Virus record (IMG/VR): IMGVR_UViG_3300028654_000001
Coordinates: 248,001 to 312,000 of that record
Length of the DNA: 64,000 nt
Reading direction: 5' to 3' (one strand)
Made by a program: the position numbers and the translations under genes. Of this stretch, positions 246 through 59,280 are shown one piece after another. The first letter of the stretch is position 1. Each line of letters opens with the position of its first letter. The notes under the pieces were generated by a model, which saw only the letters and a list, made by a program, of their open reading frames with translations, did not search any database and had not been told where the DNA came from.

Positions 246-1493
246 CTACACCGAGTAAGGGACGAGGCCTTCGTCTGAGTTCAATATAGACCAAAGGATC
301 ATTCCTAGTGTAGACCAATCTACACTAGTCTTATCTATAGACGAGGAATCATTGACCAAGTCCCTAAGCTTGATTACCTCAACGTAGGTTTTCTCTGTGT
401 CAACCTCTATACCGAAAGTCTCTCCGGATTGAGCTATTCCCATAAGGTGGTCTCGCTCAGCCTTAGTGATCCTCCCGTAGAACAACGTGCTTGTGTGAGC
501 TGATAGAGTACCTGCCAGCTGCAAGGTACCCAGCTCCTTGAGTCGAGCTGGGTCTATGGTGAAAGAGGTTTCCTCGTGGAGCTCTTCGAGGGCCACTTTC
601 TTGGTCTCCCCTTTATCTTCCTTGGCGCTCCCACCTGGTAGCTCAATAATATACCCTGTATTAGTCCTAGCCGGGCTTCTAAACTCTTTTACCAAGAGAA
701 CCTCAGTATCCCACAGATGCTTGAGACCCTCTTCCTCAGGACGGTAGAGAAGCGCTACAGATGAGACGTCTGAACGTCCGAACACGAACTCATTTTTCTT
801 GGCCCTTTGTTCGGCTGCAATCCAAACATTGACATGAAGGCACCAGCAAAAGACTTTGTCCATCTGCTGTCCCACCCGGAATGTCCAAAGGACTCGAGCA
901 CTGTCCAGGCGGTTGCCAGCGGCCGTCTGGGACTTATACCACCTCTGGAAGGTGGTGTCCTTCCAGACGAGCAAGGGTACCTGAGCTTCGCCGCCGACTC
1001 GTAGGGAACCCTCTCCCAGGCTCTTGACGGCATCCTCGAGGGTGGTGTCCAGTGTCGAGTAGTTGGCCACCTTCAACTTGGTAGCCATGTGCTGAATGTA
1101 TTGAACCTTCTGAGCATCAGGTGGGGTACCAAGAATCACCTTCCCTGTGTCTGCCCAGACTCCGAATTCGACATTGGTTGTAAGACCTGGGAGAGTATTC
1201 AGATCTCGAGGAATCCAGAAAACAATCACATCAGCCATATTCAGTGCGGAGGTTTCCCACTCAACCTGGTCGACGTAATCTCCGAACACTTTTCCATCAC
1301 GAGGTTCCGGAACAAATACGTGACCATCGAACCCAAGCTTCTCAAGTAGTTCGAGGGCTTCGGGTCTCCAACTCTTGGTTTCCTTATCCCTAGGTGTAGG
1401 CCCCGCCAAAAACAGACTCTTCACAACCTCTGTGGGAAGATCCTCTTTAGCATAGACCACCTTCATGCCCGACTTCCATGTCTCTGGATTCAT
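246..1493 (-). CDS. nucleoside 2-deoxyribosyltransferase-like domain fused to a Nudix hydrolase
   Basis: N-terminus has FLAGPTPR...SWRPEALELL...QVEWE...ADVIVFWIPRDL..LPGLTTNVEFG (NDT-like); C-terminus has the Nudix box ELPGGSAKEDKGETKKVALEELHEETS. Confidence 0.8.
   Translation of the reverse strand: MNPETWKSGMKVVYAKEDLPTEVVKSLFLAGPTPRDKETKSWRPEALELLEKLGFDGHVFVPEPRDGKVFGDYVDQVEWETSALNMADVIVFWIPRDLNTLPGLTTNVEFGVWADTGKVILGTPPDAQKVQYIQHMATKLKVANYSTLDTTLEDAVKSLGEGSLRVGGEAQVPLLVWKDTTFQRWYKSQTAAGNRLDSARVLWTFRVGQQMDKVFCWCLHVNVWIAAEQRAKKNEFVFGRSDVSSVALLYRPEEEGLKHLWDTEVLLVKEFRSPARTNTGYIIELPGGSAKEDKGETKKVALEELHEETSFTIDPARLKELGTLQLAGTLSAHTSTLFYGRITKAERDHLMGIAQSGETFGIEVDTEKTYVEVIKLRDLVNDSSSIDKTSVDWSTLGMILWSILNSDEGLVPYSV
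247..253 (-). promoter_or_regulatory. YGGTGTA motif upstream of dNMP kinase
   Basis: TACACCG on the + strand, 10 nt from ATG 236. Confidence 0.55.
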
Positions 1494-1503
1494 GGTCCAG
1501 AAT

Positions 1504-1510
1504 TACACCG
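1504..1510 (-). promoter_or_regulatory. YGGTGTA motif upstream of the NDT-Nudix gene
   Basis: TACACCG on +, 10 nt from ATG 1493. Confidence 0.55.
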
Positions 1511-1557
1511 GAAGTTGGGTACCTAGTTTACTAAACCCCTTATCGGAGTGTTCAAGC

Positions 1558-2865
1558 ATGGCATCGGACCTCCACCTAATCCAACGGGTAGCATCAAAGT
1601 GGTCGAGTAAGGATTTTGAGTCAAGGTATGCCCGCCTTCTGCTTTCGATGTCAAGGGATCAAGCCAAAAAGGTCCTTGGTTTCCCTCCAAATGCTAACCC
1701 ATCAGAAAGTGAAATTACCAAGAACTATAGGGAGTTGGCTCTTAGGAACCACCCTGATCGTGGTGGTGATCTTGACACAATGGTGGAGATCAATGTTGCC
1801 AAGGATGTGCTGACCGGAAAGGCTCAGGAACGTTGGCAACCAGAGCCGAGCCCAGAGCGTACTAAATACAAGCCACCCCCACGTCCAGAGGCAGCCTACA
1901 CAGTGAAAGGGGTTCCATTTGCCGCCGCTTGGTCTGGAGCAGGGGTCCCAAGTGGCACTGATTGGAAGTTCGTCAGTGAGCAAGTTAGCTTGTACAGTAA
2001 GGGTTTCCCAACCCAACCTGGTTGTGTACTGTATGGGCAGACAGCAACACTCCATGTTTTCTGTGCAATCTTCAAGCAAGAGTCAACTGATAAGGTATGG
2101 CCCCCTACGGATTCTGATGGGAAGGTCTTTGAGGTTGAAGAAGGGTGGCGAGCTCAAGTTCTGACGGCCCCTATTGCTAAAGATCTAGATAAGATCGCCA
2201 TTAAGTACATCAAACAGATAGTCTCAAACTTCCCAGGTCCGGGCCCCAAAGATGGGAGTGTCCCAAAGAAGTATCTCCTCTATCCTCAAAGTATGGGAAG
2301 TCCAACGGAAGCCTATATCGGGAAGATCCCCTATCGTGGGAAGTTTGCCTTGAAAGAGGTTCTGAGACTTGCTGGTCTTGTTAAAGTTGATGAGGAGAAA
2401 GCTAAAGACACACCGGCTATTATTGAATTCTGGGGTGTCCAAAATAAGCAAAAACTACGAGATAACCCGAGAGGTTACTTGGGTAGTAGCGGTGACTTCT
2501 TCCTATCCATTGATGGCAAAGAGGTTAAACTAGAAGAGGGGACCTGCGAGAAGATCGTCAAGAGTATGTTCTTGGTCTCAGCTCTTCGAAACTTCGAGTA
2601 TCGAAAAGTCTACCGGTTGAATCGCCTGAAGGAGGGTTCTCTCTTCAAAGGCGGAGCTTACTACGCCTTCTTGACTCTTTTCGAGAGCCTCACTGGGGAA
2701 CCTTCTTGGGTAAAGGATGCCTTGGAAAAGAACGTAAGGATCTTCAAGCCTGAAGATCGAACAGCTTCAGTCTTCTTGAACCTCTGCTCTGAGATGTCTT
2801 TGAAGCAAGCTTCAGTTGTTACTGGGATCCCTATGCGTGAGCTAGTAGAGATGGTCTACGACTAA
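1558..2865 (+). CDS. DnaJ (J-domain) containing protein
   Basis: AKKVLGF...ITKNYRELALRNHPDRGGDLDTMVEINVAKDVL contains the HPD motif. I prefer start ATG 1558 (MASDLHLIQRVASKW) to 1465, which overlaps the divergent gene. Confidence 0.75.
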   Translation: MASDLHLIQRVASKWSSKDFESRYARLLLSMSRDQAKKVLGFPPNANPSESEITKNYRELALRNHPDRGGDLDTMVEINVAKDVLTGKAQERWQPEPSPERTKYKPPPRPEAAYTVKGVPFAAAWSGAGVPSGTDWKFVSEQVSLYSKGFPTQPGCVLYGQTATLHVFCAIFKQESTDKVWPPTDSDGKVFEVEEGWRAQVLTAPIAKDLDKIAIKYIKQIVSNFPGPGPKDGSVPKKYLLYPQSMGSPTEAYIGKIPYRGKFALKEVLRLAGLVKVDEEKAKDTPAIIEFWGVQNKQKLRDNPRGYLGSSGDFFLSIDGKEVKLEEGTCEKIVKSMFLVSALRNFEYRKVYRLNRLKEGSLFKGGAYYAFLTLFESLTGEPSWVKDALEKNVRIFKPEDRTASVFLNLCSEMSLKQASVVTGIPMRELVEMVYD

Positions 2866-4538
2866 TCATCCAAGTCAACAGCTACCGGAGCCCCTAAGGC
2901 TGACTTCTCTACCTCAATCAAATCAGGGGGAACTTTCCCTGAAGCTGCAACCATATCAAGCAGCTTCTTGATCATCGGTAAGTCCTGTTGGTAGCTCGCT
3001 GAGTGATTCGGGCTCGGAAGCCTCAGAACCATGTACAGAGATTCTGACAGAGTCAGCTCGAGAGGGTCCTTCTTCAGGATCAGATACGACGCAGGCCCTA
3101 TCCCGTAGATGTCCGGGCCGTATTCCACGACGTTGAGATACATCTCGATGATCTTGTCCTTGGTGAACGAGCTCTCTAGGGCGACCGTTAGGATGGCTTC
3201 TTGGATCTTCCTTCCAATGGTTCGGTTCCTGTTCAGCCACAAGTTCTTCGCCAACTGCATCGTGATGGTGGAGCCGCCGCGGAAGAACCTTCCGAGCTTC
3301 AAGTTGTCCTTCAAGCTGTTCTCGATGGCCTGAGGGATGAAACCCCTGTGGTAGAAGAACGCAGGGTCCTCTGTGGTCGTGAGGGCTGTGGTCATGTTCG
3401 GACTGATCATCTGATAGGGAGTCCAGTCCGGTGCCGATGGTCCAGCTTTACGCGTGAATGGCTTTCCATTTGGATGGTACGCGGTATAGGTGAACTCACC
3501 TGAGAGATCCTTGATGAACTTCGGGGGCGGACCGGTTAGCTTGCAGCCGTTTGAGATCTTGAGTTTCACATCCGGAAGAAGCCTCAAGTCGAACTTGAAG
3601 TCTCCGACTAACCTCACCTGTTTGAGTGGATCGATCAGCATCTCTTCTGGGATAGACTCGAGCCAGTGCTGGCAAGAGTCCACGCCCCAGACATGCTTGC
3701 CTTCCCAGTTGAAGTAGATTGTCGACCACTTACTCTTCACCCAAAGGTTAGGCATCCCAACCAGAGGATTCTTGGGGTCGATAGCTGTGACCTCTACATA
3801 CCTGAAGGTGACTGGCACCGGGTAGAATCTCTTGTGCTCCACCTGGATGGACTTCGCCTTCGGGTAGATCAGGCCATCGGTAAACTCAAGGGCTAGCCCT
3901 TCAATGGTAACCGGTGGGTAGTAGATATTCCCGAGCTCGAGATGCTTGGTTTGAGTATTGAAGGAACCCTCGGTGAACTTGACCTTGTCCAGCTTGAGGA
4001 AGTCACTGATCTTTTGGAAGGCGTCTGGTAGACCAACCCAACCACTGGCAACAGTGGCTACCTTCGACTTGAAGTCGTAGTGCACCCCCTCTACCATAAC
4101 CAGACCGTACTTGGTCTCAATCTTCCCCGTGGCGGCCCGTGCCTCATTCGAATCAAAGGAGGCCTTGTAGAGTTTAGCGGAGTCCAGTCCCCTGTAGAGC
4201 TTCACGGTCAGGTTCTTACCGGTAACCTTGAAACCGGAACCGTTCTTCTGATCCTTTGAGTCAGAGGTTATGTCGACAAGAGCCAGCCCTCCATCAACCG
4301 CAATCGTCTTGGATTTTCTACAGGCAATTGCAGAATCGAAGGTACCCTCGATGTTGTGGATCTTTACGTTAACCCTCTCAAGCCTAACACAATCGAGGTT
4401 GAGTAACTTGACTGACCCAACCTCGACGCCTGGTTTCAACCCGTTGATGTAATGCTTCAGAATTGAAGGAAGAAGCCAGCCAAGTAACAGCAGGGTTACT
4501 GGTATTGAACCGATAATTAGCCATTTCTTACGTAGCAC
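2862..4538 (-). CDS. membrane-anchored peptidoglycan transglycosylase (GT51 family, MtgA/PBP-TG-like)
   Basis: N-terminal TM helix; GT51 motifs EDPAFFYHRG, GGSTITMQLAKNL, RKIQEAILTVALE, KDKIIEMYLN; no transpeptidase domain. Confidence 0.85.
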   Translation of the reverse strand: MLRKKWLIIGSIPVTLLLLGWLLPSILKHYINGLKPGVEVGSVKLLNLDCVRLERVNVKIHNIEGTFDSAIACRKSKTIAVDGGLALVDITSDSKDQKNGSGFKVTGKNLTVKLYRGLDSAKLYKASFDSNEARAATGKIETKYGLVMVEGVHYDFKSKVATVASGWVGLPDAFQKISDFLKLDKVKFTEGSFNTQTKHLELGNIYYPPVTIEGLALEFTDGLIYPKAKSIQVEHKRFYPVPVTFRYVEVTAIDPKNPLVGMPNLWVKSKWSTIYFNWEGKHVWGVDSCQHWLESIPEEMLIDPLKQVRLVGDFKFDLRLLPDVKLKISNGCKLTGPPPKFIKDLSGEFTYTAYHPNGKPFTRKAGPSAPDWTPYQMISPNMTTALTTTEDPAFFYHRGFIPQAIENSLKDNLKLGRFFRGGSTITMQLAKNLWLNRNRTIGRKIQEAILTVALESSFTKDKIIEMYLNVVEYGPDIYGIGPASYLILKKDPLELTLSESLYMVLRLPSPNHSASYQQDLPMIKKLLDMVAASGKVPPDLIEVEKSALGAPVAVDLDD

Positions 4539-4548
4539 CTTGGCACCC

Positions 4549-4555
4549 TACACCA
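4549..4555 (-). promoter_or_regulatory. YGGTGTA motif upstream of the GT51 gene
   Basis: TACACCA on +, 10 nt from GTG 4538. Confidence 0.5.
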
Positions 4556-4566
4556 ACTGGTGGGCT

Positions 4567-5076
4567 TCAGCAAGAAACATATGTACAAAGGTACAGCTTA
4601 ATATCCCGACTTGTATGATCAAGAGCGCAGATGACCTCGAATAGGATTCTCTTGATCTCGTCTAATCGATCTAAATCAACTGAAAATAGGTCATTACCTC
4701 GGTACTCACTGCATTCGTACTCCAACAACCGGTAACCAAGAACGTAGTTTGAGTTACGATCCCAGTCATCTCCGTTCAAAGTTGGGTCCACAATATGGAA
4801 CTGAAGCTTATTAGTAGACCCATCGCTAGTGTTCCACTCGTCAAACAGCTCGTCTGGGGTCTTCTTACCAAACTGTTTTTTGGAGAATTCCATGAAGGCT
4901 GGTTTGAAACTGCGAACCATTTGAGGCTCAAGCTTAGCCCCACACTTGGAGCAGAAAGGACCTCCTTGAGGCGGGTGACCCTTTGGGCACACCACAGCTC
5001 CTGGAAGGGTAATCACCAAGTCATTGGGGCTTAGGGTGGCCCCAATGACCAATCGTGGATAGTAACTTGCTCCCAT
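4567..5076 (-). CDS. hypothetical protein with a small Zn-ribbon (CPKGH...CSKCG)
   Basis: 169-aa ORF packed between neighbouring genes on the same strand. Confidence 0.6.
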   Translation of the reverse strand: MGASYYPRLVIGATLSPNDLVITLPGAVVCPKGHPPQGGPFCSKCGAKLEPQMVRSFKPAFMEFSKKQFGKKTPDELFDEWNTSDGSTNKLQFHIVDPTLNGDDWDRNSNYVLGYRLLEYECSEYRGNDLFSVDLDRLDEIKRILFEVICALDHTSRDIKLYLCTYVSC

Positions 5077-5083
5077 GAAAACC

Positions 5084-7501
5084 TCAGATCTTGATCTCGA
5101 CTTCTCTCATGTCGACTTTGCAGAGGAGATCAGCGCCTCCGAGCTCGAGAGTCATAAAATTCTCATCCAAAGATTTGAACTCTATTGGCCATATTTGCCC
5201 AACTATGATGGCAAATTTGATCTGGGCTATCTCTCGGATCTTCTTGCGGGTGACCGCAACAGCATCCTTGGCCTTCTTGTCGATCCACGCAGTAAAGGCA
5301 GCAAGCTTCTCCTCATCGGAGGGTGGCTTCCCATCCTGTGCATTTGAGACCACAGCCATTGTGTATTCCTTGGAGGCCAGCCACTGCTCGACCTCGGTCA
5401 ACGCAGGTACCAAGAGAGCCCCGCTCGTGGTTTGCTTCTTGGTAGTACCGATCTTCTTCCGAACCTCATTCACGGAAGGGAGCTTGGATAGACCGGCAAT
5501 ACTGACCTCGAGCTTCTTGGCTACATAGAAGTCAATTGCAGCCGCTGAGACTGTGTGAGGGGGTGAAAAGCCAGAATAATCGGTGAACCCTTGCTCCTTC
5601 AACCAATTAGCTATCTCGTCTCCATACGTGGCTACGAACCCTGGTGACTTCTTGGGTGGTATCTTTTCGTCCCTGATGTCTTTATAGACCTTCTGGGCTG
5701 CCCTGGACTTCTCGAGCTCCCACTGAGCCAGGAACAGGGCCTTAGCACTGGCGGCCTTGATCATCCTTCGATTGATTACAGGGAGAGCTCGGAGGTTGAT
5801 GACCCCGATCACGAAACCACCAGCCATCGAAAGCTTGGTTGGCTTGGCTTCAGCAGGGAGCAACTCAGAGAGCTTCTTGGCGGTTGCCTCTGTAACCCTC
5901 ACTGGAAGAGACTCCACGTTGACTAAACCATCCTTAACAATGGCGTAGTTACGGAAGATAAAGGTTTGGAATGACGTCGGAACCTTCCCCTTGAACTCAT
6001 CCTTGAGACGAGCTGAAATGTCGACGGTGCCGGTTTTCCTAACCCCAATCGAGATATTCGGAAAGTCCTCGTTGTAAACCAAGGAAGAGATTGGATAGCC
6101 TTCAGGGGCTGGATCAGCCACGAACTTTAGAGGTGCTGGCTTGGAATTAAGAAGAGTTGTCAGCTCCTCATTCAGCTTCTTGATCTCAGAGGCCTTCTTC
6201 TCTGTACCCAACTTGACCTTGATCTCATCAACTCTAGCTTGCTCGGCAGCAGTGAGGATCTCGTCTGCATCAATTCGACTACGGCCGATCTTTGAGTACT
6301 TGAACTCAGGGTGCTCCAACAGGATATGAGCTGACTCATCACTGGCGAGTAACCCAAGAAGATCGAGAACCGTATAAGCATCGTCATCAGGTACCTTCTT
6401 TGGATCCCAGCCCTTCGTGTAGCGGAGCTTGACATCAAAAGCCGCCGCCTTGGTAGAGTCCATGAAGTCGCTGTATTTTTGCTTTCCAAAACATGACGAA
6501 AACCGATCGACGAAGTCAACATCGGCTAGAGCCTTCAGGAACGGGAAGACTACGTCAGACTTCATGCGAACCGAGTAGAGGGACACGGCCGCATATGCAG
6601 CTGCTAGGGCAACATTATCTGCTTCACAAGTTGGCAATTGTGAGTTGCTTGTATAAGCTGCGGATACCTGACCAAGATCAAGTTTGTAAGTAGTTCCTTC
6701 CTTGTGAGGGCTAACCCTCCAGAACTCGGTTACGTCAGTAGGAAGGTTAGCTTTACCGTCCTCAACGGCGTAGGTTGTCAGTTCCCCATCGATCAGAGTG
6801 TAGACGAAGTTCCCGATGGATCCCCCAGACACCTTGACTTCTATCTTGGGTGCTCCAGAGAGCTTCTTACTCAATGAGGCCTCGAGAGCTGGTTCGTACT
6901 TGGCAAAGTGCTCAGCGAAGATCAGTTGACCTCCGGCCTTTTCTGCCATGGCCGTCAAGAGAGGCCTATCAGCGTAGTAACCATACTCCACGAAGGTTGC
7001 CGCCGATAACCCACCAGCTGCCTCTTCAACGGTACTAAGGATCTCCCCTCTTGGCCAGCAATTATCACACCCATCCGACATGAAGAACAAAGAGAAGATT
7101 GACCCTGACCTCTTGGTACTCACACGCTTGATGAGTGCTGAGACCTCCTGGAGGGGCTCCTTGAACCCGGTTAGCCCAATTGGCTGCAACCACCTGTCGA
7201 TGGCCTTGTTGACGTCCTGCAGGTCAGTGAGGGTCGCTACAGGCTCGGCCTCGAGCAGAGTACCGAACTGCCCTCTACCTGAAAACCAGATGATAGATAC
7301 CGTGTCATTAATCCCAATGAGTTTCGGGAGCTTCCTCTTTAATTGCTCGCGAATCTTCGGAAGTTCGCCATACATGCTGCCTGAAACGTCAATAACCAAT
7401 AGGTGATTGGTTGGTACCTCGACAGGCTTCGCCTTCTCTTTTGTCTTCTTCAACTCTTGGTGAACAAGAAACAGCCCGTCAGCAACCTGGTATGACAGCA
7501 T
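5084..7501 (-). CDS. von Willebrand factor A (VWA) domain protein
   Basis: MIDAS motif LVIDVSGSM, then T...LFFMSDG; about 550 aa of unassigned C-terminal sequence. Confidence 0.8.
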   Translation of the reverse strand: MLSYQVADGLFLVHQELKKTKEKAKPVEVPTNHLLVIDVSGSMYGELPKIREQLKRKLPKLIGINDTVSIIWFSGRGQFGTLLEAEPVATLTDLQDVNKAIDRWLQPIGLTGFKEPLQEVSALIKRVSTKRSGSIFSLFFMSDGCDNCWPRGEILSTVEEAAGGLSAATFVEYGYYADRPLLTAMAEKAGGQLIFAEHFAKYEPALEASLSKKLSGAPKIEVKVSGGSIGNFVYTLIDGELTTYAVEDGKANLPTDVTEFWRVSPHKEGTTYKLDLGQVSAAYTSNSQLPTCEADNVALAAAYAAVSLYSVRMKSDVVFPFLKALADVDFVDRFSSCFGKQKYSDFMDSTKAAAFDVKLRYTKGWDPKKVPDDDAYTVLDLLGLLASDESAHILLEHPEFKYSKIGRSRIDADEILTAAEQARVDEIKVKLGTEKKASEIKKLNEELTTLLNSKPAPLKFVADPAPEGYPISSLVYNEDFPNISIGVRKTGTVDISARLKDEFKGKVPTSFQTFIFRNYAIVKDGLVNVESLPVRVTEATAKKLSELLPAEAKPTKLSMAGGFVIGVINLRALPVINRRMIKAASAKALFLAQWELEKSRAAQKVYKDIRDEKIPPKKSPGFVATYGDEIANWLKEQGFTDYSGFSPPHTVSAAAIDFYVAKKLEVSIAGLSKLPSVNEVRKKIGTTKKQTTSGALLVPALTEVEQWLASKEYTMAVVSNAQDGKPPSDEEKLAAFTAWIDKKAKDAVAVTRKKIREIAQIKFAIIVGQIWPIEFKSLDENFMTLELGGADLLCKVDMREVEIKI

Positions 7502-7533
7502 AGGTGAGGAATCCTTCCGTGGGAATCCCTTAA

Positions 7534-7540
7534 TACACCG
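7534..7540 (-). promoter_or_regulatory. YGGTGTA motif upstream of the VWA gene
   Basis: TACACCG on +, 32 nt from ATG 7501. Confidence 0.45.
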
Positions 7541-7576
7541 ATGGTCACCAGAATCAATGACTTTCTTGTGAACAGA

Positions 7577-8143
7577 TTACAGATCAGATATACTGATCCC
7601 AGTCATTTTTTGAAGCTTCTCAACGACATCAGTCTTTATCTGGCTGATTCTTGGTTCGGATACGTTCAGTTGAGCGGCCAATTCCTTTTGGGTCATACCT
7701 TCGAAGTAGTACTTCAGAATAATCGTCTCTTCGCGCTTGGTAAGCTTCGCCATTTTTGCTATAACTTTTAGGAGAAGCTGTCTAGAAGATACTTGATCCT
7801 CACCCAAGGTTAGATCAACCACGTCATTGTCTAGAACATCCCTAAACTCAGGTTGATTATCGGGTCCTGCCCTGCGCACATACCCGCTCTCTTTGCGGAT
7901 CTCATCAATGATCTGCCCGCGGATCCTCACTCGAGCATAGTAGACGAACTCATCTTCAGAACCCTCGTATCGGTTACAGGCATCCCATAGACCGATCTTA
8001 CCCCAGTGGATCAGTTCCTCAATTTGAAATGGAAATCCAGAACCTCTTAGACTCCATGCAACTTGCTTAGCTAAATAGCTATACTTGTTGAACCTCTTGT
8101 TGAAACCCCTACTGATAGGAGCCTTTTCCTTGTGATTGAACAA
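7577..8143 (-). CDS. sigma-70 family RNA polymerase sigma factor, FliA/WhiG (sigma28)-like
   Basis: Region 2 EELIHWGKIGLWDACNRY...FVYYARVRIRGQIIDEIRK; region 4 HTH LTKREETIILKYYFEGMTQKELAAQLNVSEPRISQI. Confidence 0.85.
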   Translation of the reverse strand: MFNHKEKAPISRGFNKRFNKYSYLAKQVAWSLRGSGFPFQIEELIHWGKIGLWDACNRYEGSEDEFVYYARVRIRGQIIDEIRKESGYVRRAGPDNQPEFRDVLDNDVVDLTLGEDQVSSRQLLLKVIAKMAKLTKREETIILKYYFEGMTQKELAAQLNVSEPRISQIKTDVVEKLQKMTGISISDL

Positions 8144-8164
8144 TTAAGATCCCTATCCTAGAAA

Positions 8165-9607: not shown

Positions 9608-9635
9608 CCTACTGAGGGTTTATCGAATGACTATC

Positions 9636-10760: not shown

Positions 10761-11191
10761 TTGGGTCTCAAGGGGCACAAAATATGAGCTTGGTTGAATA
10801 CATGATACACCTCATCCCAAGTACTCGGATCGAATCCAGCTTTATCGTCGATCAATATGGAGAAGTAGGGTTTACGCGTGAAGTCACCAGTCTTGGTGTT
10901 CTCCACAGGAGTTTCGTTCAAACCCTTGAAGTTGACTCCCTCTTCCGCAAGCCGATCGGTATATTTAGGGCCTTCTATTGGGTAACAGGAGGTCCAGAGA
11001 ACCAAGTAGATCTCAGGAAAGGAACTTATTTTTCTTAGGGCTTCGATAGCGTTAGGGTAAAAAGGTGCTGACGCATCCCTATAATTAGAGTCACAGATGG
11101 TATCATGGGCGTCAACCATGACATAGATAGTGTCCCACCCACGCTGCTGAGCAGTTAGGTACGCCTTGAGAATAGCTCGTCTCAGATCCAT
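10757..11191 (-). CDS. HAD-superfamily phosphatase-like protein
   Basis: IYVMVDAHDTI (DxxDT), LWTS and KPYFSILIDDKAG motifs. Confidence 0.6.
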   Translation of the reverse strand: MDLRRAILKAYLTAQQRGWDTIYVMVDAHDTICDSNYRDASAPFYPNAIEALRKISSFPEIYLVLWTSCYPIEGPKYTDRLAEEGVNFKGLNETPVENTKTGDFTRKPYFSILIDDKAGFDPSTWDEVYHVFNQAHILCPLRPK

Positions 11192-11202
11192 GGTGGTTAG
11201 AA

Positions 11203-11209
11203 TACACCG
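11203..11209 (-). promoter_or_regulatory. YGGTGTA motif upstream of the HAD gene
   Basis: TACACCG on +, 11 nt from ATG 11191. Confidence 0.55.
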
Positions 11210-12959: not shown

Positions 12960-12962
12960 TCT

Positions 12963-12969
12963 CGGTGTA
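12963..12969 (+). promoter_or_regulatory. YGGTGTA motif upstream of dam
   Basis: CGGTGTA on +, 15 nt from ATG 12985; the motif flips orientation with the gene. Confidence 0.55.
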
Positions 12970-18001: not shown

Positions 18002-18008
18002 TACACCG
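18002..18008 (-). promoter_or_regulatory. YGGTGTA motif upstream of the wHTH gene
   Basis: TACACCG on +, 38 nt from ATG 17963. Confidence 0.45.
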
Positions 18009-19675: not shown

Positions 19676-19685
19676 CCATTACACC

Positions 19686-19964
19686 TCAGGCCACCACTAC
19701 TAAGACGGGAGCCAGCTCCTCAGCCCAGAACTCTACTTGTCGACCATCAGGGAAAGAAACCCCAATCATCGGGTCATCGGGGAAGTGCTGCCCACATCCA
19801 CATGAGTACTCCAAGTAATCGACTATTCCGAATAGACCTATAAACTCTGATACATCTGTAAACGGAGGATTGATGTCAATTGCATCTACTACCTTAACCC
19901 GTTGCCCTGGCTGATAAGGAGAGCCATCAACAGGCACTGTAATGTACTCCAGAACTTCTAGCAT
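19686..19964 (-). CDS. hypothetical protein, possible SH3-like fold
   Basis: YQPGQRVKV...GIV...IGVSF...EFWAEEL pattern. Confidence 0.55.
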   Translation of the reverse strand: MLEVLEYITVPVDGSPYQPGQRVKVVDAIDINPPFTDVSEFIGLFGIVDYLEYSCGCGQHFPDDPMIGVSFPDGRQVEFWAEELAPVLVVVA

Positions 19965-21896: not shown

Positions 21897-21908
21897 CGGT
21901 GTAACACC
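21897..21908. promoter_or_regulatory. overlapping head-to-head motif at a divergent gene junction (CGGTGTA on +, GGTGTTA on -)
   Basis: CCCGGTGTAACACCAGGG; 9 nt from ATG 21913. Confidence 0.5.
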
Positions 21909-25067: not shown

Positions 25068-25074
25068 TACACCG
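25068..25074 (-). promoter_or_regulatory. YGGTGTA motif upstream of the DUF4419 gene
   Basis: TACACCG on +, 9 nt from ATG 25058. Confidence 0.55.
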
Positions 25075-31459: not shown

Positions 31460-31466
31460 TACACCG
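31460..31466 (-). promoter_or_regulatory. YGGTGTA motif upstream of clpX
   Basis: TACACCG on +, 13 nt from ATG 31446. Confidence 0.55.
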
Positions 31467-38976: not shown

Positions 38977-38983
38977 TACACCA
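38977..38983 (-). promoter_or_regulatory. YGGTGTA motif upstream of the tnpB/cas12-like gene
   Basis: TACACCA on +, 9 nt from GTG 38967. Confidence 0.5.
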
Positions 38984-42000: not shown

Positions 42001-42007
42001 TACACCG
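42001..42007 (-). promoter_or_regulatory. YGGTGTA motif upstream of the deoxyribonucleotidase gene
   Basis: TACACCG on +, 9 nt from ATG 41991. Confidence 0.55.
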
Positions 42008-46461: not shown

Positions 46462-46468
46462 TACACCA
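46462..46468 (-). promoter_or_regulatory. YGGTGTA motif upstream of the Ycf46-like gene
   Basis: TACACCA on +, 35 nt from ATG 46426. Confidence 0.4.
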
Positions 46469-47159: not shown

Positions 47160-47166
47160 TACACCG
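47160..47166 (-). promoter_or_regulatory. YGGTGTA motif upstream of the DUF2997 gene
   Basis: TACACCG on +, 28 nt from ATG 47131. Confidence 0.45.
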
Positions 47167-55544: not shown

Positions 55545-55551
55545 TACACCG
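55545..55551 (-). promoter_or_regulatory. YGGTGTA motif upstream of the DnaC-like gene
   Basis: TACACCG on +, 12 nt from ATG 55532. Confidence 0.5.
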
Positions 55552-55556: not shown

Positions 55557-58500
55557 TCATTTATTTGAGGTATCTCTTAGAGATTGCAGCAAATCCTTGA
55601 TGTCATTCTCGCTTCGATCAAACTTTAGAGCTCCGGCAGCAGCTTCCCCGATGACCTGATCGATCAGCCCTTTCTTCCGACGAAGCTTCTGAACTACCTT
55701 GCTGTCAATCGTTTCAGCCTTTTTACCTGAGAGGCCGGGTCGTCTCGTAATCAAGTGAACAGCAAGAACTCGAGGGTGCGGTGACCCAATTCGAATCATC
55801 CGACCAAGAAGCTGAACATACCTGCCCCAAGACCACGGGGAATCAAACAGAATCATCGCAGAAGCGGCCTGGAGGTTAATTGCCTCACTACCGGCATCGG
55901 TGATGATGACTACCCTGACTTTACTGCTAAGATCCTGAAATTGGTCTTGAGCACTCTTTCTATTTTTACCGCTCTGTGAGCCGGATATGGAAACACTCTT
56001 GATACCCTCTTTGGTCAAAATAGCTTGAAGTCTAGGGATATGACTGGCAAACCGAGTGTAGACAATGACCTTCTCACCGTCGAACTCTTCAGACAGTAAT
56101 TCAACAAGAGCCGCTTCTTTGGAGCTTCGCCCCTCGAAGTCAGACCCCCCACCCTCTTCAAACTTCAGTAAAGAAAGAGAATTACAGATCTCTTGAATGT
56201 AAATGAGGCTTGTAAGTTGTTTGGTGTCCTTGTAGTCACGAAGTTCACCGTCTCCAAGTTCAAGAAGCCCTCCCAGTGCTTCTGCGTACTTTCTCTCTTC
56301 CACTTTGGAGAGTTCACACACAACTTCGCGAGTTGTGAGGGCTGGGAGTTCTGTAGAAACATCCTGTTTCGCCCGCCCGTAGAAGAATGGGTCGATAGTT
56401 TGTCTGAAGTGTTGTAGGTTCTTATACCCAACAACAATAGGTACCTTTCCCCCACCCTTAATCCGCTGCATCTCAGTGACGCAGTAAACATTAAGGAATG
56501 CATTCTTGGTACCGAAGGTCTCCGGCCTAATGACCTTGTAGATACCAAAACCCTCCATCAAGTGATTCTGAAGGAGAGTGGCGGTTAAACCCCAGACACG
56601 TTTAGCTTTACCAGACAAGAACTTGCAAGTTTGATGAGTCTTAGTTGTCGGATTTTTGCAGGCTGTGATCTCATCGAAGATCACAGTAAGCCGTGGAATA
56701 CCTGATGTCAGCTTGTCGAGGAAACCCAGGCCAGCAACAGCTTGAGTACCCTTTTTGGCCCCCACCGGCGGTGGCTCCTTGGTAATCCCTTGATCCCAAT
56801 CACGAACCACCCCGTGATAGTTGACGACAAGGACTCCAGGCCCTGTATGCCTAAACCAAGCAGAGTAGGCTTCTTTACGCTGATCTAGGGTACCAGAAGC
56901 AATGAAGTATTTGATCCCAATCGAGAACTTGTCAATCTCAGAAGCCCACTGTCCAATAGCCGACTTCGGACACACTACCATGACCTTCATGGTAGGATCC
57001 CTCTCCCAGATATAACAGAGAGCACCAATAGCTTGGAGGGTGTTGTGGTTGATGAATCCGTTTCCTGCGAAGCAATGCTCAGGATCGTCAATCTCCAAGT
57101 CCATCACAGGAGCTGACTTATACTCAACGGATACAATTGGGTCGTAGTAAAAATGGCGCTGAGTGACTTGAAGCACTCTCCGGTACTCATTTGTACTTGA
57201 TAAACCCATCTTATAGGAGACCTCCAAAAGCTTCTGTAGCCACTGGTAGCTCGGATCACGATATCCGCACAGAATATTCTTCAAAGTTGACCTGAAGCAT
57301 TCTCCAAACTGCTTCAAACCTGAACCAACTCGATTGGAATTTGCTCCCTGCTTAGAAGTAGCTTGCAGGATTAGTTTTTTGAGAGCACCAACCTCGGAGG
57401 TGAAGTTTGGTATTAGGTCTTTGTTCGGATTGGAGGATCGTGTAAGACTAGACTTCAACAAGGCTACCTTGCGCTTGGATCGAAGCCCAATCTCCCTCTG
57501 AAAAACCCTAGCATCGTCACCAAAGAACGTTACCCTCCAGTAGGTATGAGAGTACCCTTTAACTTTCTTTGGCTGACGGTTAGAAACCACACCAAAGCGC
57601 AAGAGTAACAATTGAACCTGCTTGGCTAATTCCTCTGAGGCAGTACTAAACTCTATGCCACCCCCATTAGATACAGAACACTCAGCCTCAATGAGAGCAG
57701 ACAAGAAGCATCGAATTGCCTCCCTTGTACCCCGCAGTATCAAGTCGGGTATACTCTTCTCTGCAGAAAGAACTTCCCTGACCCCGCAAGATATCAGATA
57801 ACGACGTATGTCCTTTGATGAAACGGCTACGAGCTTGTCTTTCGCCTTACTGTTGGCATTCCCCTTCCAACCAAATATAGCATACAACAGATCCCGTATC
57901 TCACGGTGGTTGTCGGGGTTCGACTCCAGGTGTTGAGTAATCTGGACGCTTGTTGGATGCCTATTACCCTCGCTGATTAACCATCCCAATAAGGTGGCTA
58001 ACTTGGGAGTTAGACGGTTTGGGTAGGTATACCCACGTGAACATTGAGCTAGATCAAAGTCAATGATGGGCTCTTTAGTTGGAAATGGTACCTCACAGCG
58101 ATCTATACAAATGTGGTCTCCAATCTTGAGGTCAGGGAGCTTGACAAAACCCTCTCTAGAAGTCTGCCTAGCGTATACAGGATGGATCAAACTCCCTTCA
58201 AGTTGATAACCATTTCTAGTTGTCAACTTGATAGTTGGCTTGGTACCTCCCCAGTAGAAACTCTTAACTGGAGCCACCCTTGATCCTGTCCACACAGATA
58301 CTGGATAATCTAAGTTGTAAAAACCCTCAGACTTAACCCCCTTCGGCTTCAAAGAATCAATCGTTAGTAGTCCGAGATCAGTATTCAGTAGAGTGCTGCC
58401 GGTGACACACTTCCCCAAACCAGTTCCATCCCCCAGAATCATTCGATTTACCCTAAGTAAGTGGTAAATCCCCTGAACCTGATAGTATCTGAGCCTTAGA

Positions 58501-58655
58501 GGTTGGGTAGTCCCATCAATTCCGACAATCTCCTCACGGAGCATCTTGGTCGGTCTCAATTGACAAGTCTTACTAGCCCGAACTTGCTTTAGCTGTTCGT
58601 AGATCTGTTCAAATTCGGTAGCCCGAGTGGCTACCGGTATTGCTGCTGTCGGCAT
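55557..58655 (-). CDS. SNF2-family helicase containing an intein
   Basis: LRYYQVQG, ILGDGTGLGK|TLQ, DEIT, LTATLLQN, GSEAINLQAA and QLLGRMIRIG motifs. Confidence 0.88.
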   Translation of the reverse strand: MPTAAIPVATRATEFEQIYEQLKQVRASKTCQLRPTKMLREEIVGIDGTTQPLRLRYYQVQGIYHLLRVNRMILGDGTGLGKCVTGSTLLNTDLGLLTIDSLKPKGVKSEGFYNLDYPVSVWTGSRVAPVKSFYWGGTKPTIKLTTRNGYQLEGSLIHPVYARQTSREGFVKLPDLKIGDHICIDRCEVPFPTKEPIIDFDLAQCSRGYTYPNRLTPKLATLLGWLISEGNRHPTSVQITQHLESNPDNHREIRDLLYAIFGWKGNANSKAKDKLVAVSSKDIRRYLISCGVREVLSAEKSIPDLILRGTREAIRCFLSALIEAECSVSNGGGIEFSTASEELAKQVQLLLLRFGVVSNRQPKKVKGYSHTYWRVTFFGDDARVFQREIGLRSKRKVALLKSSLTRSSNPNKDLIPNFTSEVGALKKLILQATSKQGANSNRVGSGLKQFGECFRSTLKNILCGYRDPSYQWLQKLLEVSYKMGLSSTNEYRRVLQVTQRHFYYDPIVSVEYKSAPVMDLEIDDPEHCFAGNGFINHNTLQAIGALCYIWERDPTMKVMVVCPKSAIGQWASEIDKFSIGIKYFIASGTLDQRKEAYSAWFRHTGPGVLVVNYHGVVRDWDQGITKEPPPVGAKKGTQAVAGLGFLDKLTSGIPRLTVIFDEITACKNPTTKTHQTCKFLSGKAKRVWGLTATLLQNHLMEGFGIYKVIRPETFGTKNAFLNVYCVTEMQRIKGGGKVPIVVGYKNLQHFRQTIDPFFYGRAKQDVSTELPALTTREVVCELSKVEERKYAEALGGLLELGDGELRDYKDTKQLTSLIYIQEICNSLSLLKFEEGGGSDFEGRSSKEAALVELLSEEFDGEKVIVYTRFASHIPRLQAILTKEGIKSVSISGSQSGKNRKSAQDQFQDLSSKVRVVIITDAGSEAINLQAASAMILFDSPWSWGRYVQLLGRMIRIGSPHPRVLAVHLITRRPGLSGKKAETIDSKVVQKLRRKKGLIDQVIGEAAAGALKFDRSENDIKDLLQSLRDTSNK
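57042..58409 (-). mobile_element. intein with LAGLIDADG endonuclease (456 aa) in the SNF2 Walker A
   Basis: Begins CVTGST, ends NHN followed by T; LGWLISEG and LSALIEAEC. Confidence 0.9.
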
Positions 58656-58661
58656 TAAAAC

Positions 58662-59264
58662 TCACCAAAAAGAGAAGTAGAGTCCCGCTTGCGGGTTTAC
58701 TTTCAGAGTCCACCAAGAGTAGGCAGCCCCTATAAACCAACCAAAGTTACGAGTGATGTCCATTCCAACCCCAGCCCCCGCGGATCTGAATCCAGTGGCT
58801 ACATTGAAGTTGACGGCCTTGTAATAGAGGATATCCCAGAGAATCCCGACATCAACCGCTTGCTTTGCTGAACTCTGGCTGAAGGCATCCACGAAAAGAA
58901 AACTGCCTGAAAACTTAGGCCGGAACCTGAACCCCCAGACAGGAGGTTCCTTCTTAGCCACTATAAGTGTCAGCTTCTCGTTAGCCGACACATCATACCC
59001 GCACCAGGACATATTGATGGTGTACGGGTGTGGATCTGATCCTGAGTAGTAAACCCTTCCATCCACATCAGTGGTGATTGTCACCGAATCAAGCTTGAAC
59101 GTTGGTTTGGTTTTCTGAAAACAACTCTTCTCTTTAAGAATTGAGACGAAAGAACTCATGTCAGCTTTGGGGACACAGGTGTCGTCAGCATTCGGGCATG
59201 AAACATCAGCCCTACTAGGAGAAGCATAGAATACGACTGCCAAAACTAGAGGGAGGTTTTTCAT
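58662..59264 (-). CDS. secreted/outer-membrane protein, possible spanin-type lysis component
   Basis: Signal peptide MKNLPLVLAVVFYASPSRA; C-terminal amphipathic beta-strands ending QAGLYFSFW. Confidence 0.5.
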   Translation of the reverse strand: MKNLPLVLAVVFYASPSRADVSCPNADDTCVPKADMSSFVSILKEKSCFQKTKPTFKLDSVTITTDVDGRVYYSGSDPHPYTINMSWCGYDVSANEKLTLIVAKKEPPVWGFRFRPKFSGSFLFVDAFSQSSAKQAVDVGILWDILYYKAVNFNVATGFRSAGAGVGMDITRNFGWFIGAAYSWWTLKVNPQAGLYFSFW

Positions 59265-59273
59265 GGTGTTAGT

Positions 59274-59280
59274 TACACCG
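59274..59280 (-). promoter_or_regulatory. YGGTGTA motif upstream of 58662-59264
   Basis: TACACCG on +, 9 nt from ATG 59264. Confidence 0.55.

What the first reader, a model, noticed from the sequence alone, without database searches (positions are those of the whole stretch)
247..59280. Genome-wide YGGTGTA element at near-fixed distance before start codons
Seen: at least 15 copies, always in the sense orientation of the downstream gene and always preceded by a pyrimidine. Gaps to the start are 9-15 nt at 247, 1504, 4549, 11203, 12963(+), 21897(+), 25068, 31460, 38977, 42001, 55545 and 59274, and 28-38 nt at 7534, 18002, 46462 and 47160. I saw no conserved -35 box, and most short-gap genes lack a clear SD. 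The genes are mainly metabolism, replication and host-takeover genes. Inference: a single-box phage promoter giving near-leaderless mRNAs, or a non-SD translation signal.
Basis: partly seen in the sequence, partly recalled or inferred. Interest (0 to 1): 0.7.

Follow-up and report, generated by a model that had tools for sequence, protein, structure and literature searches.

The report
Single-box promoter of a soil megaphage
A strict six-letter word, GGTGTA, sits about 10 bases before the start of roughly 85 genes of an uncultured 512-kb soil phage and most likely acts as a one-box promoter that makes messenger RNAs with almost no leader, which has not been seen in the giant phages whose transcripts have been mapped.

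Summary
The window lies in a 512,571-bp phage genome with terminal repeats, from rhizosphere/soil.

Main results:
- GGTGTA (consensus yyyGGTGTAnT) lies 9-12 nt before 75 start codons and 7-15 nt before 84-86.
- Using longest-ORF starts only, it occurs 48 times at that distance. All hexamers average 0.73 (sd 1.33).
- Each single-mismatch variant occurs 3 times or fewer.
- No -35 box is present.
- None of the 86 motif genes has a 5-nt SD, against 18% of other genes.
- Long-gap copies carry an SD.

Evidence for a DNA-level promoter:
- Motif genes are enriched at divergent unit heads.
- Two motifs serve divergent starts only 18 or 33 nt apart.
- The word is depleted inside genes on both strands.
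- It is conserved with its spacing in four related contigs whose flanks have diverged.
- One copy is conserved 5 nt before a tRNA-Trp gene in two phages, which excludes a purely translational signal.

No phage RNA polymerase was found. Three sigma-family genes were, one of them in the window.

Best reading: a class-specific single-box promoter for sigma-redirected host polymerase, giving mRNAs with leaders of roughly 0-5 nt. No RNA data exist, so transcript 5' ends are inferred. Verdict: a new variant of a known kind.

The parts
247..253 (-). CGGTGTA, gap 10 to ATG at 236 (260-aa gene that runs off the window's left end)
   Evidence: An independent gene call gives the same start. The orthologue in L025 has gap 10.
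1504..1510 (-). CGGTGTA, gap 10 to ATG at 1493 (415 aa, nucleoside 2-deoxyribosyltransferase-like)
   Evidence: The source's gene caller picks a later ATG. Differences from the L025 orthologue in the disputed stretch fall mostly at third codon positions, which favours the motif-linked ATG.
4549..4555 (-). TGGTGTA, gap 10 to GTG at 4538 (558 aa, transglycosylase domain)
   Evidence: An independent gene call gives the same GTG start.
7534..7540 (-). CGGTGTA, long gap of 32 to ATG at 7501 (805 aa, VWA-like), with SD-like GGAAGGA in the leader
   Evidence: L026 keeps gap 32 plus GGAAGGA; L025 has gap 15.
7577..8143 (-). Gene for a 188-aa FliA/WhiG-like sigma factor (regions 2 and 4). It is one of three sigma-family genes of the phage and a candidate specificity factor. 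It lies in the gene array headed by the motif at 11203.
11203..11209 (-). CGGTGTA, gap 11 to ATG at 11191 (144 aa). Heads the array 144 aa, RlaP-like, 480 aa, sigma.
   Evidence: Orthologues have gap 12 (L025) and gap 11 (L026), with unrelated flanks.
12963..12969 (+). CGGTGTA, gap 15 to ATG at 12985 (286 aa, D12 N6-adenine methyltransferase)
   Evidence: The L025 orthologue (287 aa) has gap 10.
18002..18008 (-). CGGTGTA, long gap of 38 to ATG at 17963 (273 aa), with SD-like GGAAAGGA in the leader
   Evidence: The L025 orthologue has gap 35 with the same SD.
19680..19686 (-).
21897..21903 (+). CGGTGTA, gap 9 to ATG at 21913 (199 aa). Head of a divergent unit.
25068..25074 (-). CGGTGTA, gap 9 to ATG at 25058 (362 aa, DUF4419)
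31460..31466 (-). CGGTGTA, gap 13 to ATG at 31446 (791 aa, ClpX-like with an intein)
38977..38983 (-). TGGTGTA, gap 9 to GTG at 38967 (542 aa, weak Cas12f/TnpB TNB-domain match)
42001..42007 (-). CGGTGTA, gap 9 to ATG at 41991 (188 aa, NT5C 5'-nucleotidase)
   Evidence: Orthologues in L012 and L013 have gap 8.
46462..46468 (-). TGGTGTA, long gap of 35 to ATG at 46426 (981 aa, AAA+ with an intein), with SD AGGAG in the leader
   Evidence: Orthologues keep the motif at gaps 32 and 54, with GGGAG/CGGAG.
47160..47166 (-). CGGTGTA, long gap of 28 to ATG at 47131 (62 aa), with SD AGAGGA in the leader
   Evidence: Orthologues have gaps 19 and 21, with AGGAG.
55545..55551 (-). CGGTGTA, gap 12 to ATG at 55532 (292 aa)
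   Evidence: The gap is 12 in the window, L012 and L013, with unrelated flanks.
59274..59280 (-). CGGTGTA, gap 9 to ATG at 59264 (200 aa). The SNF2 helicase gene follows 6 nt behind this gene, without a motif of its own.
   Evidence: The L012 orthologue has gap 9. In L012 and L013 the SNF2 gene has its own motif.

Best explanation
YGGTGTA (full consensus yyyGGTGTAnT) is the single recognition box of one class of phage promoters. It is read on the DNA by the host's multisubunit RNA polymerase, redirected by a phage-encoded sigma-family protein. Three candidates are encoded: two FliA/WhiG-like proteins, one of them at window 7577-8143, and one protein with region 2 only. No -35 box is needed.

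Transcription is predicted to start about 6-11 nt downstream of the box. In the roughly 75-85 genes where the start codon lies 9-12 nt after the box, the mRNA is therefore leaderless or has a leader of at most about 5 nt. It has no Shine-Dalgarno sequence and would be translated by the leaderless route. Where the box lies 19-54 nt upstream, the mRNA has a short leader with an ordinary SD.

The class covers nucleotide-metabolism, replication, DNA-modification, chaperone/protease and many unknown genes, as well as the small genes interleaved with the tRNA array. It is almost absent from the tail/structural block. It is therefore probably an early or middle temporal class.

What is shown:
- the motif, its strictness and its spacing;
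- the absence of an SD and of a -35 box;
- its placement at the heads of transcription units;
- its conservation in relatives;
- its presence before a tRNA gene;
- the absence of a recognisable phage polymerase;
- the presence of sigma genes.

What is inferred:
- that it is a promoter;
- where transcription starts;
- which factor reads it;
- the temporal class.
For: 1. Position and strength. 48 copies lie at gap 9-12 before longest-ORF starts, against 0.73 +/- 1.33 for all hexamers. The word is enriched 13-fold in intergenic DNA in the sense orientation (110 observed against 8.5 expected). Every single-mismatch variant occurs 3 times or fewer.

2. Nothing else is conserved from -40 to -4. In the tRNA block the DNA just upstream of several motifs is the 3' half of different tRNA genes, so no common -35 element can exist there.

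3. Unit heads. 42 of 86 motif genes have an opposite-strand upstream neighbour, against 188 of 659 other genes (p = 2.7e-4). Only 7 of 86 abut their upstream gene, against 261 of 659 (p = 7e-10).

4. Five divergent spacers carry a motif for each gene, including spacers of 33 nt (G000 222681-222713, back-to-back TACACC|GGTGTA) and 18 nt (G000 203061-203078).

5. SD dichotomy. 0 of 86 motif genes have a 5-nt SD, against 18% of other genes, 25% in the late block and 7% of random codons (p = 6e-7). All four long-gap copies in the window, and several elsewhere, carry AGGAG-type SDs.

6. Comparative. In contigs of four related genomes (L012; L013 and L020, both from one 183-kb record; L025; L026), whose proteins are 40-87% identical, the box is kept while the flanks diverge. 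Short gaps are kept (12/12/12; 9/9; 9/8/8; 11/12/11). Long gaps drift (28/19/21; 35/32/54; 32/32/15).

7. Boxes come and go with operon structure, as for the SNF2 gene and the 386-aa gene.

8. Non-coding target. CTTGGTGTAA followed by 5 nt and then tRNA-Trp is conserved in G000 and G001, with unrelated upstream sequence.

9. YGGTGTA is depleted inside genes on both strands: sense 32 against 46.5 +/- 6.5, antisense 35 against 54.7 +/- 7.6.

10. Machinery. There are three Sigma70_r2 hits, two of them FliA/WhiG-like. There is no Rpb2_6 hit and no DFDGD or DxDGD motif in any frame. The giant proteins are tail, baseplate, helicase and glycosyltransferase proteins.

11. Geometry. With a 10-nt gap the TA of the box falls at -12/-11 relative to the A of ATG. 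[quoted passage not shown]
Against: - No transcript 5' end has been seen. No RNA run holding this genome was listed.
- The box does not resemble any known sigma -10 consensus beyond the TA. It is far stricter than housekeeping -10 elements.
- Both FliA-like sigmas have a region 4, which normally reads a -35 box, yet none is found.
- The tRNA-Trp site requires a start no more than 6 nt after the box, whereas a strictly leaderless mRNA needs a start 10-11 nt after it. Either start-site choice is flexible or the mRNAs carry leaders of 3-5 nt.
- No pyrimidine(-1)/purine(+1) preference marks any candidate start position.
- Terminators directly upstream of the box are anecdotal, not general.
- The link between sigma and motif is untested. 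Every contig carrying a sigma orthologue belongs to the same clade, so there is no negative control.
- The depletion inside genes is modest (z = -2.2 and -2.6).
- My gene map is a crude longest-ORF map. Independent gene calls covered only about 20 kb of the window and two relatives.
Confidence: 0.72

Rival explanations
1. It is a non-SD translation-initiation signal in the mRNA. GGUGUA, 9-10 nt before AUG, would recruit the ribosome through rRNA pairing or a phage-encoded factor.
For: The distance to start codons is very sharp, with a peak at 9-10 nt. Motif genes lack an SD. The phage encodes an IF1 homologue. GGUG can pair with CACC of the 16S 3' end (established knowledge).
Against: - A copy is conserved 5 nt before a tRNA-Trp gene in two phages.
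- Long-gap copies (19-54 nt) are conserved in orthologues, carry their own SD, and drift in gap length.
- Motif genes are enriched at the heads of divergent units, with no other conserved promoter-like signal upstream.
- Antisense copies are also depleted inside genes.
- The base before GGUG is a pyrimidine in 88% of sites and A in only 9 of 84, whereas anti-SD pairing would favour A.
- GGUG ends 11-12 nt from AUG, far beyond the usual SD spacing.
- No S1, S21 or IF3 gene was found.
Confidence: 0.07
2. It is a promoter, but for a phage-encoded RNA polymerase that sequence models do not recognise (a divergent single-subunit or two-barrel enzyme) rather than for sigma-redirected host polymerase.
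For: - A short, invariant box without a -35 element is typical of phage-polymerase promoters.
- The PF00940 search is uninformative, because its controls did not ring.
- Many large proteins have no annotation.
- A second motif class with hairpin-like arms exists elsewhere in the genome. It loosely recalls the hairpin promoters of N4 (established knowledge).
Against: - There is no Rpb2_6 hit and no DFDGD or DxDGD catalytic motif in any frame.
- The largest proteins match tail, baseplate, helicase or glycosyltransferase families.
- The phage does carry three sigma-family genes, which are useful only with a cellular-type polymerase.
- The box spans 8-11 informative positions, not the roughly 20 of T7-type promoters.
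Confidence: 0.12
3. It is an RNA-processing site. A sequence-specific endoribonuclease would cut at or near GGUGUA in polycistronic transcripts, releasing tRNAs and creating short-leader mRNAs.
For: In the tRNA block the motif starts 1-5 nt after the 3' ends of four tRNAs and 5 nt before tRNA-Trp. A strict hexamer would suit a sequence-specific nuclease.
Against: - The motif is enriched at the heads of divergent units rather than inside operons, and rarely occurs where genes abut.
- Paired motifs in 18-33-nt divergent spacers would require promoters buried in the neighbouring genes.
- Antisense depletion inside genes is unexpected for a signal read on RNA.
- The model does not explain why motif genes lack an SD.
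Confidence: 0.06
4. It is a chance or compositional artefact, or a repeated paralogous 5' region rather than a functional signal.
For: About 210 of the 297 genomic GGTGTA copies are background. Some are tRNA 5' ends (GGTGTAGCTCA...).
Against: The excess at gap 9-12 has z about 35. No shuffle reached the window's count. The flanks are unrelated between copies. The box is conserved in orthologous positions in four related contigs.
Confidence: 0.01

Closest known systems
Bacteriophage T4 late promoters (TATAAATA, read by the sigma-family protein gp55 with gp33 and the sliding clamp)
   Same: Both are a single, nearly invariant box around -10 with no -35 element. Both are phage-specific, define one temporal gene class, and use host core polymerase with a phage sigma-family protein. 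(The T4 properties are from established knowledge.)
   Different: The sequence is unrelated (GGTGTA against TATAAATA). T4 late mRNAs have ordinary leaders with an SD, whereas here the box sits at a fixed 9-12 nt from the start codon and the genes lack an SD. No homology to gp55, gp33 or gp45 was tested. The candidate sigmas here are FliA-like with a region 4, plus one protein with region 2 only.
'TA-led' leaderless genes of Actinobacteria and Deinococcus-Thermus (-10 box about 10 bp upstream of the start codon; Zheng et al. 2011, PMC3160421)
   Same: Both show a promoter-type signal containing TA about 10 bp upstream of the start codon, no SD, and SD-led genes coexisting in the same genome.
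   Different: In those bacteria the signal is the degenerate housekeeping TANNNT. Here it is an invariant GGTGTA, specific to a phage clade and to a subset of its genes. Leaderless 5' ends have been mapped experimentally in those bacteria and not here.
Sigma cascades of large phages such as Bacillus phage SPO1 (gp28, gp33/34)
   Same: Both have several phage-encoded sigma factors, with distinct promoter classes for gene blocks. Here a second motif class (GTARTAC) marks a different genome region. (The SPO1 properties are from established knowledge.)
   Different: SPO1 promoters are two-box (-35 and -10) with leadered mRNAs. No assignment of a sigma to a class has been made here.
Mapped jumbo phages phiKZ and AR9
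   Same: All are giant phages with class-specific short promoter motifs.
   Different: phiKZ and AR9 use their own multisubunit polymerases. Their 5' UTRs are 26-491 nt (AR9, PMC5312081), or mostly 31-40 nt with no leaderless transcript detected (phiKZ, PMC8244752). This phage has no recognisable polymerase, and its motif leaves no room for a leader.
FliA (sigma-28) promoters, TAAA-N15-GCCGATAA
   Same: The candidate factor is FliA/WhiG-like. An 8-nt extended -10-type box ending in TA(A) is formally similar.
   Different: No TAAA -35 box is present, and the -10 sequence differs at most positions. The FliA consensus is quoted from established knowledge and was not tested here.

Membership tests
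Shine-Dalgarno ribosome-binding site | Complementarity to the CCUCC core of the 16S 3' end | tested here: not met
   Only GGUG could pair with CACC. The preceding base is C or T in 88% of sites and A in 9 of 84. Leadered genes of the same phage use AGGAG-type SDs.
Shine-Dalgarno ribosome-binding site | Spacing of about 5-9 nt to the start codon | tested here: not met
   GGUG ends 11-12 nt before the start codon, because the gap is 9-10 nt after GGTGTA.
Shine-Dalgarno ribosome-binding site | Occurs only in front of protein-coding genes | tested here: not met
   A copy is conserved 5 nt before tRNA-Trp in two phages.
Leaderless ('TA-led') gene architecture | Promoter-type signal containing TA about 10 bp upstream of the start codon | tested here: met
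   With gaps of 9-10 nt the TA of the box falls at -11/-10 or -12/-11. The criterion is taken from PMC3160421.
Leaderless ('TA-led') gene architecture | No SD between the signal and the start codon | tested here: met
   0 of 86 motif genes have a 5-nt SD, against 18% of other genes (p = 6e-7).
Leaderless ('TA-led') gene architecture | Primary transcript 5' end at or within a few nt of the start codon | not testable with these tools
   No RNA run was listed. The tRNA-Trp site implies a start no more than 6 nt after the box, so leaders of 0-5 nt are all possible.
Sigma-70-family two-box promoter (TTGACA-N17-TATAAT) | -35 and -10 hexamers with 16-18-nt spacing | tested here: not met
   There is no -35 signal upstream of the box. 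Generic sigma-70-like sites are not enriched in window 1-20000 (12 found against 16.9 expected).
T4-type single-box late promoter | One invariant box near -10 and no -35 element | tested here: met
T4-type single-box late promoter | TATAAATA sequence, with gp55, gp33 and the clamp as factors | tested here: not met
   The sequence is GGTGTA. The factors were not searched by homology. A sigma-like protein with region 2 only exists at G000 484268-485422.
FliA/sigma-28 promoter | TAAA at -35 and GCCGATAA at -10 | tested here: not met
   The matrix shows neither element. A FliA-like sigma is nevertheless encoded.
Promoter of a phage-encoded multisubunit RNA polymerase (phiKZ/AR9 type) | Beta/beta'-like genes in the phage genome | tested here: not met
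   There is no PF00562 hit, and the controls for that search rang. No DFDGD motif occurs in any of the six frames.
Promoter of a T7-type single-subunit RNA polymerase | A T7-like polymerase gene, and a conserved promoter of about 17-23 bp that includes the start site | tested here: inconclusive
   PF00940 gave no hit, but the controls did not ring either. The conserved block is only 8-11 nt.
N4-type hairpin promoter | Inverted repeat forming a hairpin at the promoter | tested here: not met
   Arm complementarity is no better than after shuffling (4.17 against 4.00). There is only a weak folding-energy excess (-4.6 against -3.5 kcal/mol).

The most novel reading that the evidence does not exclude
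This megaphage clade may run a large part of its early/middle programme as a dedicated leaderless regulon. A phage sigma would read an invariant one-box promoter placed so that transcripts begin at or within a few bases of the start codon. At tRNA-Trp, transcription would begin at the mature 5' end of the tRNA itself. Phage gene expression would then be independent of SD-based initiation, and for that tRNA possibly independent of RNase P. This could let the phage keep translating while host SD-led translation is shut down.
Probability: 0.25. Interest if true: 0.75.

Novelty: new variant of a known kind. Interest (0 to 1): 0.55.

Why it matters
Almost nothing is known about how uncultured huge phages organise transcription.

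- **A readable regulatory code.** The genome carries a strict GGTGTA class of about 85-110 copies, a second GTARTAC class in another genome block, and SD-led late genes. This can be used to delimit transcription units and to correct start codons. In several genes the motif-linked start disagrees with automatic gene calls.
- **A first for giant phages, if confirmed.** The mRNAs would form the first large leaderless or near-leaderless regulon described in a giant phage. The mapped jumbo phages phiKZ and AR9 have none.
- **A testable pairing.** The finding points to a pairing between a phage FliA-like sigma and a one-box promoter.
- **A possible tool.** A six-base promoter that needs no -35 box and no leader is also a compact part for expression design, once its factor is identified.

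Tried and rejected
- **RNA evidence.** Two searches for sequencing runs listed only DNA metagenomes from rhizosphere and soil, and no RNA run.
- **Terminator adjacency.** I hoped to show that terminators abut the box. A strict scan found 2 of 86 against 4 of 660, and a looser scan found 1 of 86. T-rich tracts are somewhat commoner upstream (29% against 14%), but the argument is only anecdotal (window 46462 and L012).
- **Hairpin idea for GGTGTA.** Several window copies look hairpin-like, but arm complementarity equals the shuffled controls and the folding-energy excess is small. Rejected as a defining feature.
- **TSS base preference.** None was found.
- **Sigma-motif co-occurrence.** The sigma was not found in the fragments G001-G003, which are 4-38% complete. 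The first search of viral contigs with the sigma found nothing. The contigs that do carry sigma orthologues all belong to the same clade, so there is no negative control. P0011's contigs had no DNA available.
- **Host identification.** The phage IF1 gave only 37-38% matches, to Spirochaetota and Armatimonadota MAGs. GenBank phages share at most 30% PolA identity, and essentially nothing matches the sigma. The host is unknown, so its 16S 3' end could not be compared directly. The phage's own SD-led genes imply a canonical anti-SD.
- **Literature.** A search for the hexamer returned only unrelated primer hits.
- **TAACTAAC.** This enriched word turned out to be overlapping stop codons.
- **Distant relative.** L015 (43% PolA identity) shows no comparable word.
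- **Whole-record counts.** Total counts in the fragment G001 are not informative, because the control pattern is equally frequent there.

Full report
**Context**

The window is bases 248,001-312,000 of a 512,571-bp virus record with direct terminal repeats. It has about 48% G+C. The genome recurs in rhizosphere and soil DNA metagenomes. It has no cultured relative: PolA is at most 30% identical to any GenBank phage, and the sigma factor has essentially no match there.

The window encodes replication and metabolism genes, several of them interrupted by inteins. They include PolA, an SNF2 helicase, a ClpX-like protein, an AAA+ protein, a Dam methyltransferase, an NT5C nucleotidase, a nucleoside deoxyribosyltransferase-like protein and a transglycosylase.

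**Checking the observation**

One more short-gap copy lies at 19680. Seven other copies lie inside genes. The window holds 23 YGGTGTA against 9.9 +/- 3.4 in shuffles.

I built a crude gene map of the whole genome from non-overlapping longest ORFs. It has 747 ORFs and 92% coverage.
- Of 297 GGTGTA copies, 84-86 lie 7-15 nt upstream of a start. The peak is sharp, at 9 nt (23 copies), 10 (26), 11 (7) and 12 (11).
- With no knowledge of the motif, and using only the first start codon of each frame, GGTGTA occurs 48 times at gap 9-12. The mean over all hexamers is 0.73 (sd 1.33), and the best unrelated hexamers reach 6-7.
- The hexamer is essentially invariant. Each of the 18 single-mismatch variants occurs 0-3 times at that position.
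- The extended consensus is yyyGGTGTAnT, and nothing is conserved between -40 and -4 of the box.
- GGTGTA is the most enriched word in intergenic DNA, with 110 sense copies against 8.5 expected.
- Independent gene calls for a near-identical contig and for two relatives agree with the motif-linked starts in most cases.

**Is it a translation signal or a promoter?**

Several independent lines point to a DNA-level promoter.

(a) *Placement at unit heads.* Half of the motif genes (42 of 86) have an upstream neighbour on the opposite strand, against 29% of other genes (p = 2.7e-4). Only 8% abut or overlap their upstream gene, against 40% (p = 7e-10). The motif marks 22% of divergent heads but only 3.5% of tightly packed co-directional genes.

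(b) *Divergent spacers.* Five divergent spacers carry one box for each gene. At G000 222681-222713 the two start codons are 33 nt apart, with TACACC|GGTGTA back to back. At 203061-203078 they are 18 nt apart, and each box abuts the other gene's start codon. Each of these genes needs its own promoter, and the box is the only shared upstream signal.

(c) *SD dichotomy.* None of the 86 short-gap genes has a 5-nt SD match. The figures are 18% for other genes, 25% for the tail/structural block and 7% for random in-frame codons. The copies that lie 19-54 nt upstream do carry AGGAG-type SDs. The late block uses ordinary SDs, so the host ribosome evidently has a canonical anti-SD.

(d) *Comparative evidence.* Contigs of four related genomes were found through PolA and through the sigma factor: L012; L013 and L020 (both from the same 183-kb record); L025 (from a 473-kb contig); and L026. 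Their proteins are 40-87% identical to the window's, and their intergenic flanks cannot be aligned with it.
- The box is kept upstream of orthologous genes.
- Short gaps are kept: 12/12/12, 9/9, 9/8/8 and 11/12/11.
- Long gaps drift: 28/19/21, 35/32/54 and 32/32/15.
- Boxes appear and disappear with operon structure. The SNF2 gene has its own box in L012 and L013, but not in the window, where it follows its neighbour by 6 nt.

(e) *A non-coding target.* The phage carries 42 tRNAs and a tmRNA at 458-480 kb. CTTGGTGTAA followed by 5 nt and the 5' end of tRNA-Trp is conserved in G000 and in the relative G001, although the sequence upstream of the box is unrelated. A translation signal has no role there. 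In the same block the unit 'tRNA, 1-5 nt, GGTGTA, 9-10 nt, ATG' recurs and is conserved in the relative. The DNA upstream of those boxes is therefore the 3' half of various tRNA genes and cannot hold a common -35 element.

(f) *Depletion inside genes.* YGGTGTA is depleted on both strands relative to codon-shuffled genes: sense 32 against 46.5 +/- 6.5, and antisense 35 against 54.7 +/- 7.6. Avoidance of antisense copies fits a DNA signal and not an mRNA signal. The effect is modest.

(g) *Poor fit to an SD.* Only GGUG could pair with the 16S 3' end. It ends 11-12 nt from the start codon, and the base before it is a pyrimidine rather than the A that pairing would favour.

**Which polymerase?**

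I found no RNA polymerase of the phage's own.
- There is no hit to the beta-subunit domain, and the controls for that search rang.
- There is no DFDGD or DxDGD catalytic motif in any frame.
- The largest proteins match tail, baseplate, helicase and glycosyltransferase families.
- The T7-type search was uninformative, because its controls did not ring.

The phage does encode three sigma-family proteins:
- a 188-aa FliA/WhiG-like protein with regions 2 and 4, in the window (7577-8143, - strand);
- a 269-aa paralogue at 77 kb;
- a 384-aa protein with only a region-2 match, at 484 kb.

The window's sigma has a tight orthologue group at 60-87% identity on phage-sized contigs. Identity then falls to 39% or less, for cellular FliA-like proteins. 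The window's sigma gene lies in the array headed by the box at 11203, so it may be a product of this promoter class rather than its reader. Which sigma reads the box is not established.

**Where does transcription start?**

- If the TA of the box corresponds to positions -12/-11 of a sigma-type -10 element, a 10-nt gap puts the start on the A of ATG. That is the geometry described for leaderless genes (PMC3160421).
- The conserved tRNA-Trp site allows a start no later than 6 nt after the box.
- No base preference marks a start position.

I therefore state only that the start is predicted within 6-11 nt of the box. That gives leaders of about 0-5 nt for the short-gap genes, with no room for an SD.

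**Other ideas tested**

- Several window copies look like hairpins. Across all sites, however, arm complementarity equals the shuffled controls, and the folding-energy excess is small.
- Terminators directly upstream of the box are not general.
- Generic sigma-70 promoters and intrinsic terminators are not enriched in the window.

**Distribution and class**

Motif genes are dense at 160-310 kb, reaching 10 of 33 genes per 20 kb. They are nearly absent from 320-440 kb, the tail/structural block. A second motif class, cCCTCAnnnGTARTACTGAGc-ATG, marks about 33 genes, mostly at 12-190 kb. Its GTA lies at the same 9-nt distance from ATG, and its arms are partly complementary. Together with the SD-led late genes, this looks like a temporal programme with several promoter classes. 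Such a programme would match the presence of several sigma factors.

**Comparison with known systems**

- In function the box most resembles the T4 late promoter: one invariant box, no -35 element, and a phage sigma-family factor.
- In geometry it most resembles the TA-led leaderless genes of Actinobacteria and Deinococcus.
- It is a member of neither. The sequence is different, the T4 factors were not tested, and the bacterial signal is the degenerate housekeeping -10 element.
- In the mapped jumbo phages phiKZ and AR9, which use their own polymerases, no leaderless transcripts were found.
- A literature search for the hexamer as a promoter found nothing relevant.

**Verdict**

The promoter reading with near-leaderless mRNAs is well supported by sequence and comparative evidence, but no transcript ends have been observed. 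The translation-signal reading is not supported. I rate it a new variant of a known kind, of moderate interest.

Noticed in passing
G000 12-190 kb, outside the window (for example G000 75000-75021, 87601-87622, 88779-88800 on +; 67378, 156245, 140955 on -): There is a second upstream motif class, cCCTCAnnnGTARTACTGAGc-ATG, at about 33 sites. Its GTA lies 9 nt from ATG, the same distance as in GGTGTA. Its flanks are complementary, with apparent covariation (CTCA/TGAG, CCCTCA/TGAGGG, CTCTC/GAGAG, TCAAG/CTTGA). Stems of 4 bp or more occur in 70% of sites, against 48% after shuffling. It may be a second promoter class or a hairpin element.
   Followed up: partly
G000 468120-468125 (- strand) and L020 16272-16277 (- strand): GGTGTA lies exactly 5 nt upstream of the mature 5' end of tRNA-Trp in two related phages. 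If the box is a promoter, this tRNA could be transcribed from its first nucleotide, without a 5' leader.
   Followed up: partly
G000 457935-479593 (- strand): The phage carries a block of 42 tRNA genes and a tmRNA, interleaved with small ORFs that each carry their own GGTGTA box. The tmRNA tag predicted here (VADLPRDSLGSG) differs from the conventional ANDNALAAAA predicted in the relative (L020). ARAGORN also calls a tRNA with anticodon CTA at G000 498602-498674.
   Followed up: no
window 47843-52093, 55557-58655, 29071-31446, 43481-46426, 19973-21817: Five genes in the window carry intein/LAGLIDADG insertions: PolA, the SNF2 helicase, the ClpX-like gene, the AAA+ gene and a DUF1848 gene. That is an unusually high density.
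   Followed up: no
window 37339-38967 (- strand): A 542-aa protein has a weak Cas12f/TnpB TNB-domain match and sits directly behind a GGTGTA box (GTG start, gap 9).
   Followed up: no
G000 57007-57231 (L022 1483-1707, + strand): The phage encodes a translation initiation factor IF1 homologue of 74 aa. No S1, S21 or IF3 was found. It lies in the block rich in the second motif class.
   Followed up: partly
G000 222681-222713 and 203061-203078: Two divergent promoter pairs are extremely compact. One is a 33-nt, nearly perfect palindrome with back-to-back boxes. The other is an 18-nt spacer in which each box abuts the opposite gene's start codon.
   Followed up: yes
L026 2699-3226 (- strand): In one relative an HNH/NUMOD4 homing-endonuclease gene is inserted upstream of the Dam methyltransferase gene. 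There the GGTGTA box (gap 11) precedes the endonuclease gene.
   Followed up: no
window 1466-1493 and 12922-12985: Automatic gene calls on a near-identical contig place two starts differently from the motif-linked starts: 406 against 415 aa, and 307 against 286 aa. Orthologue lengths and third-position substitutions favour the motif-linked starts, so the motif can help to correct annotation.
   Followed up: partly
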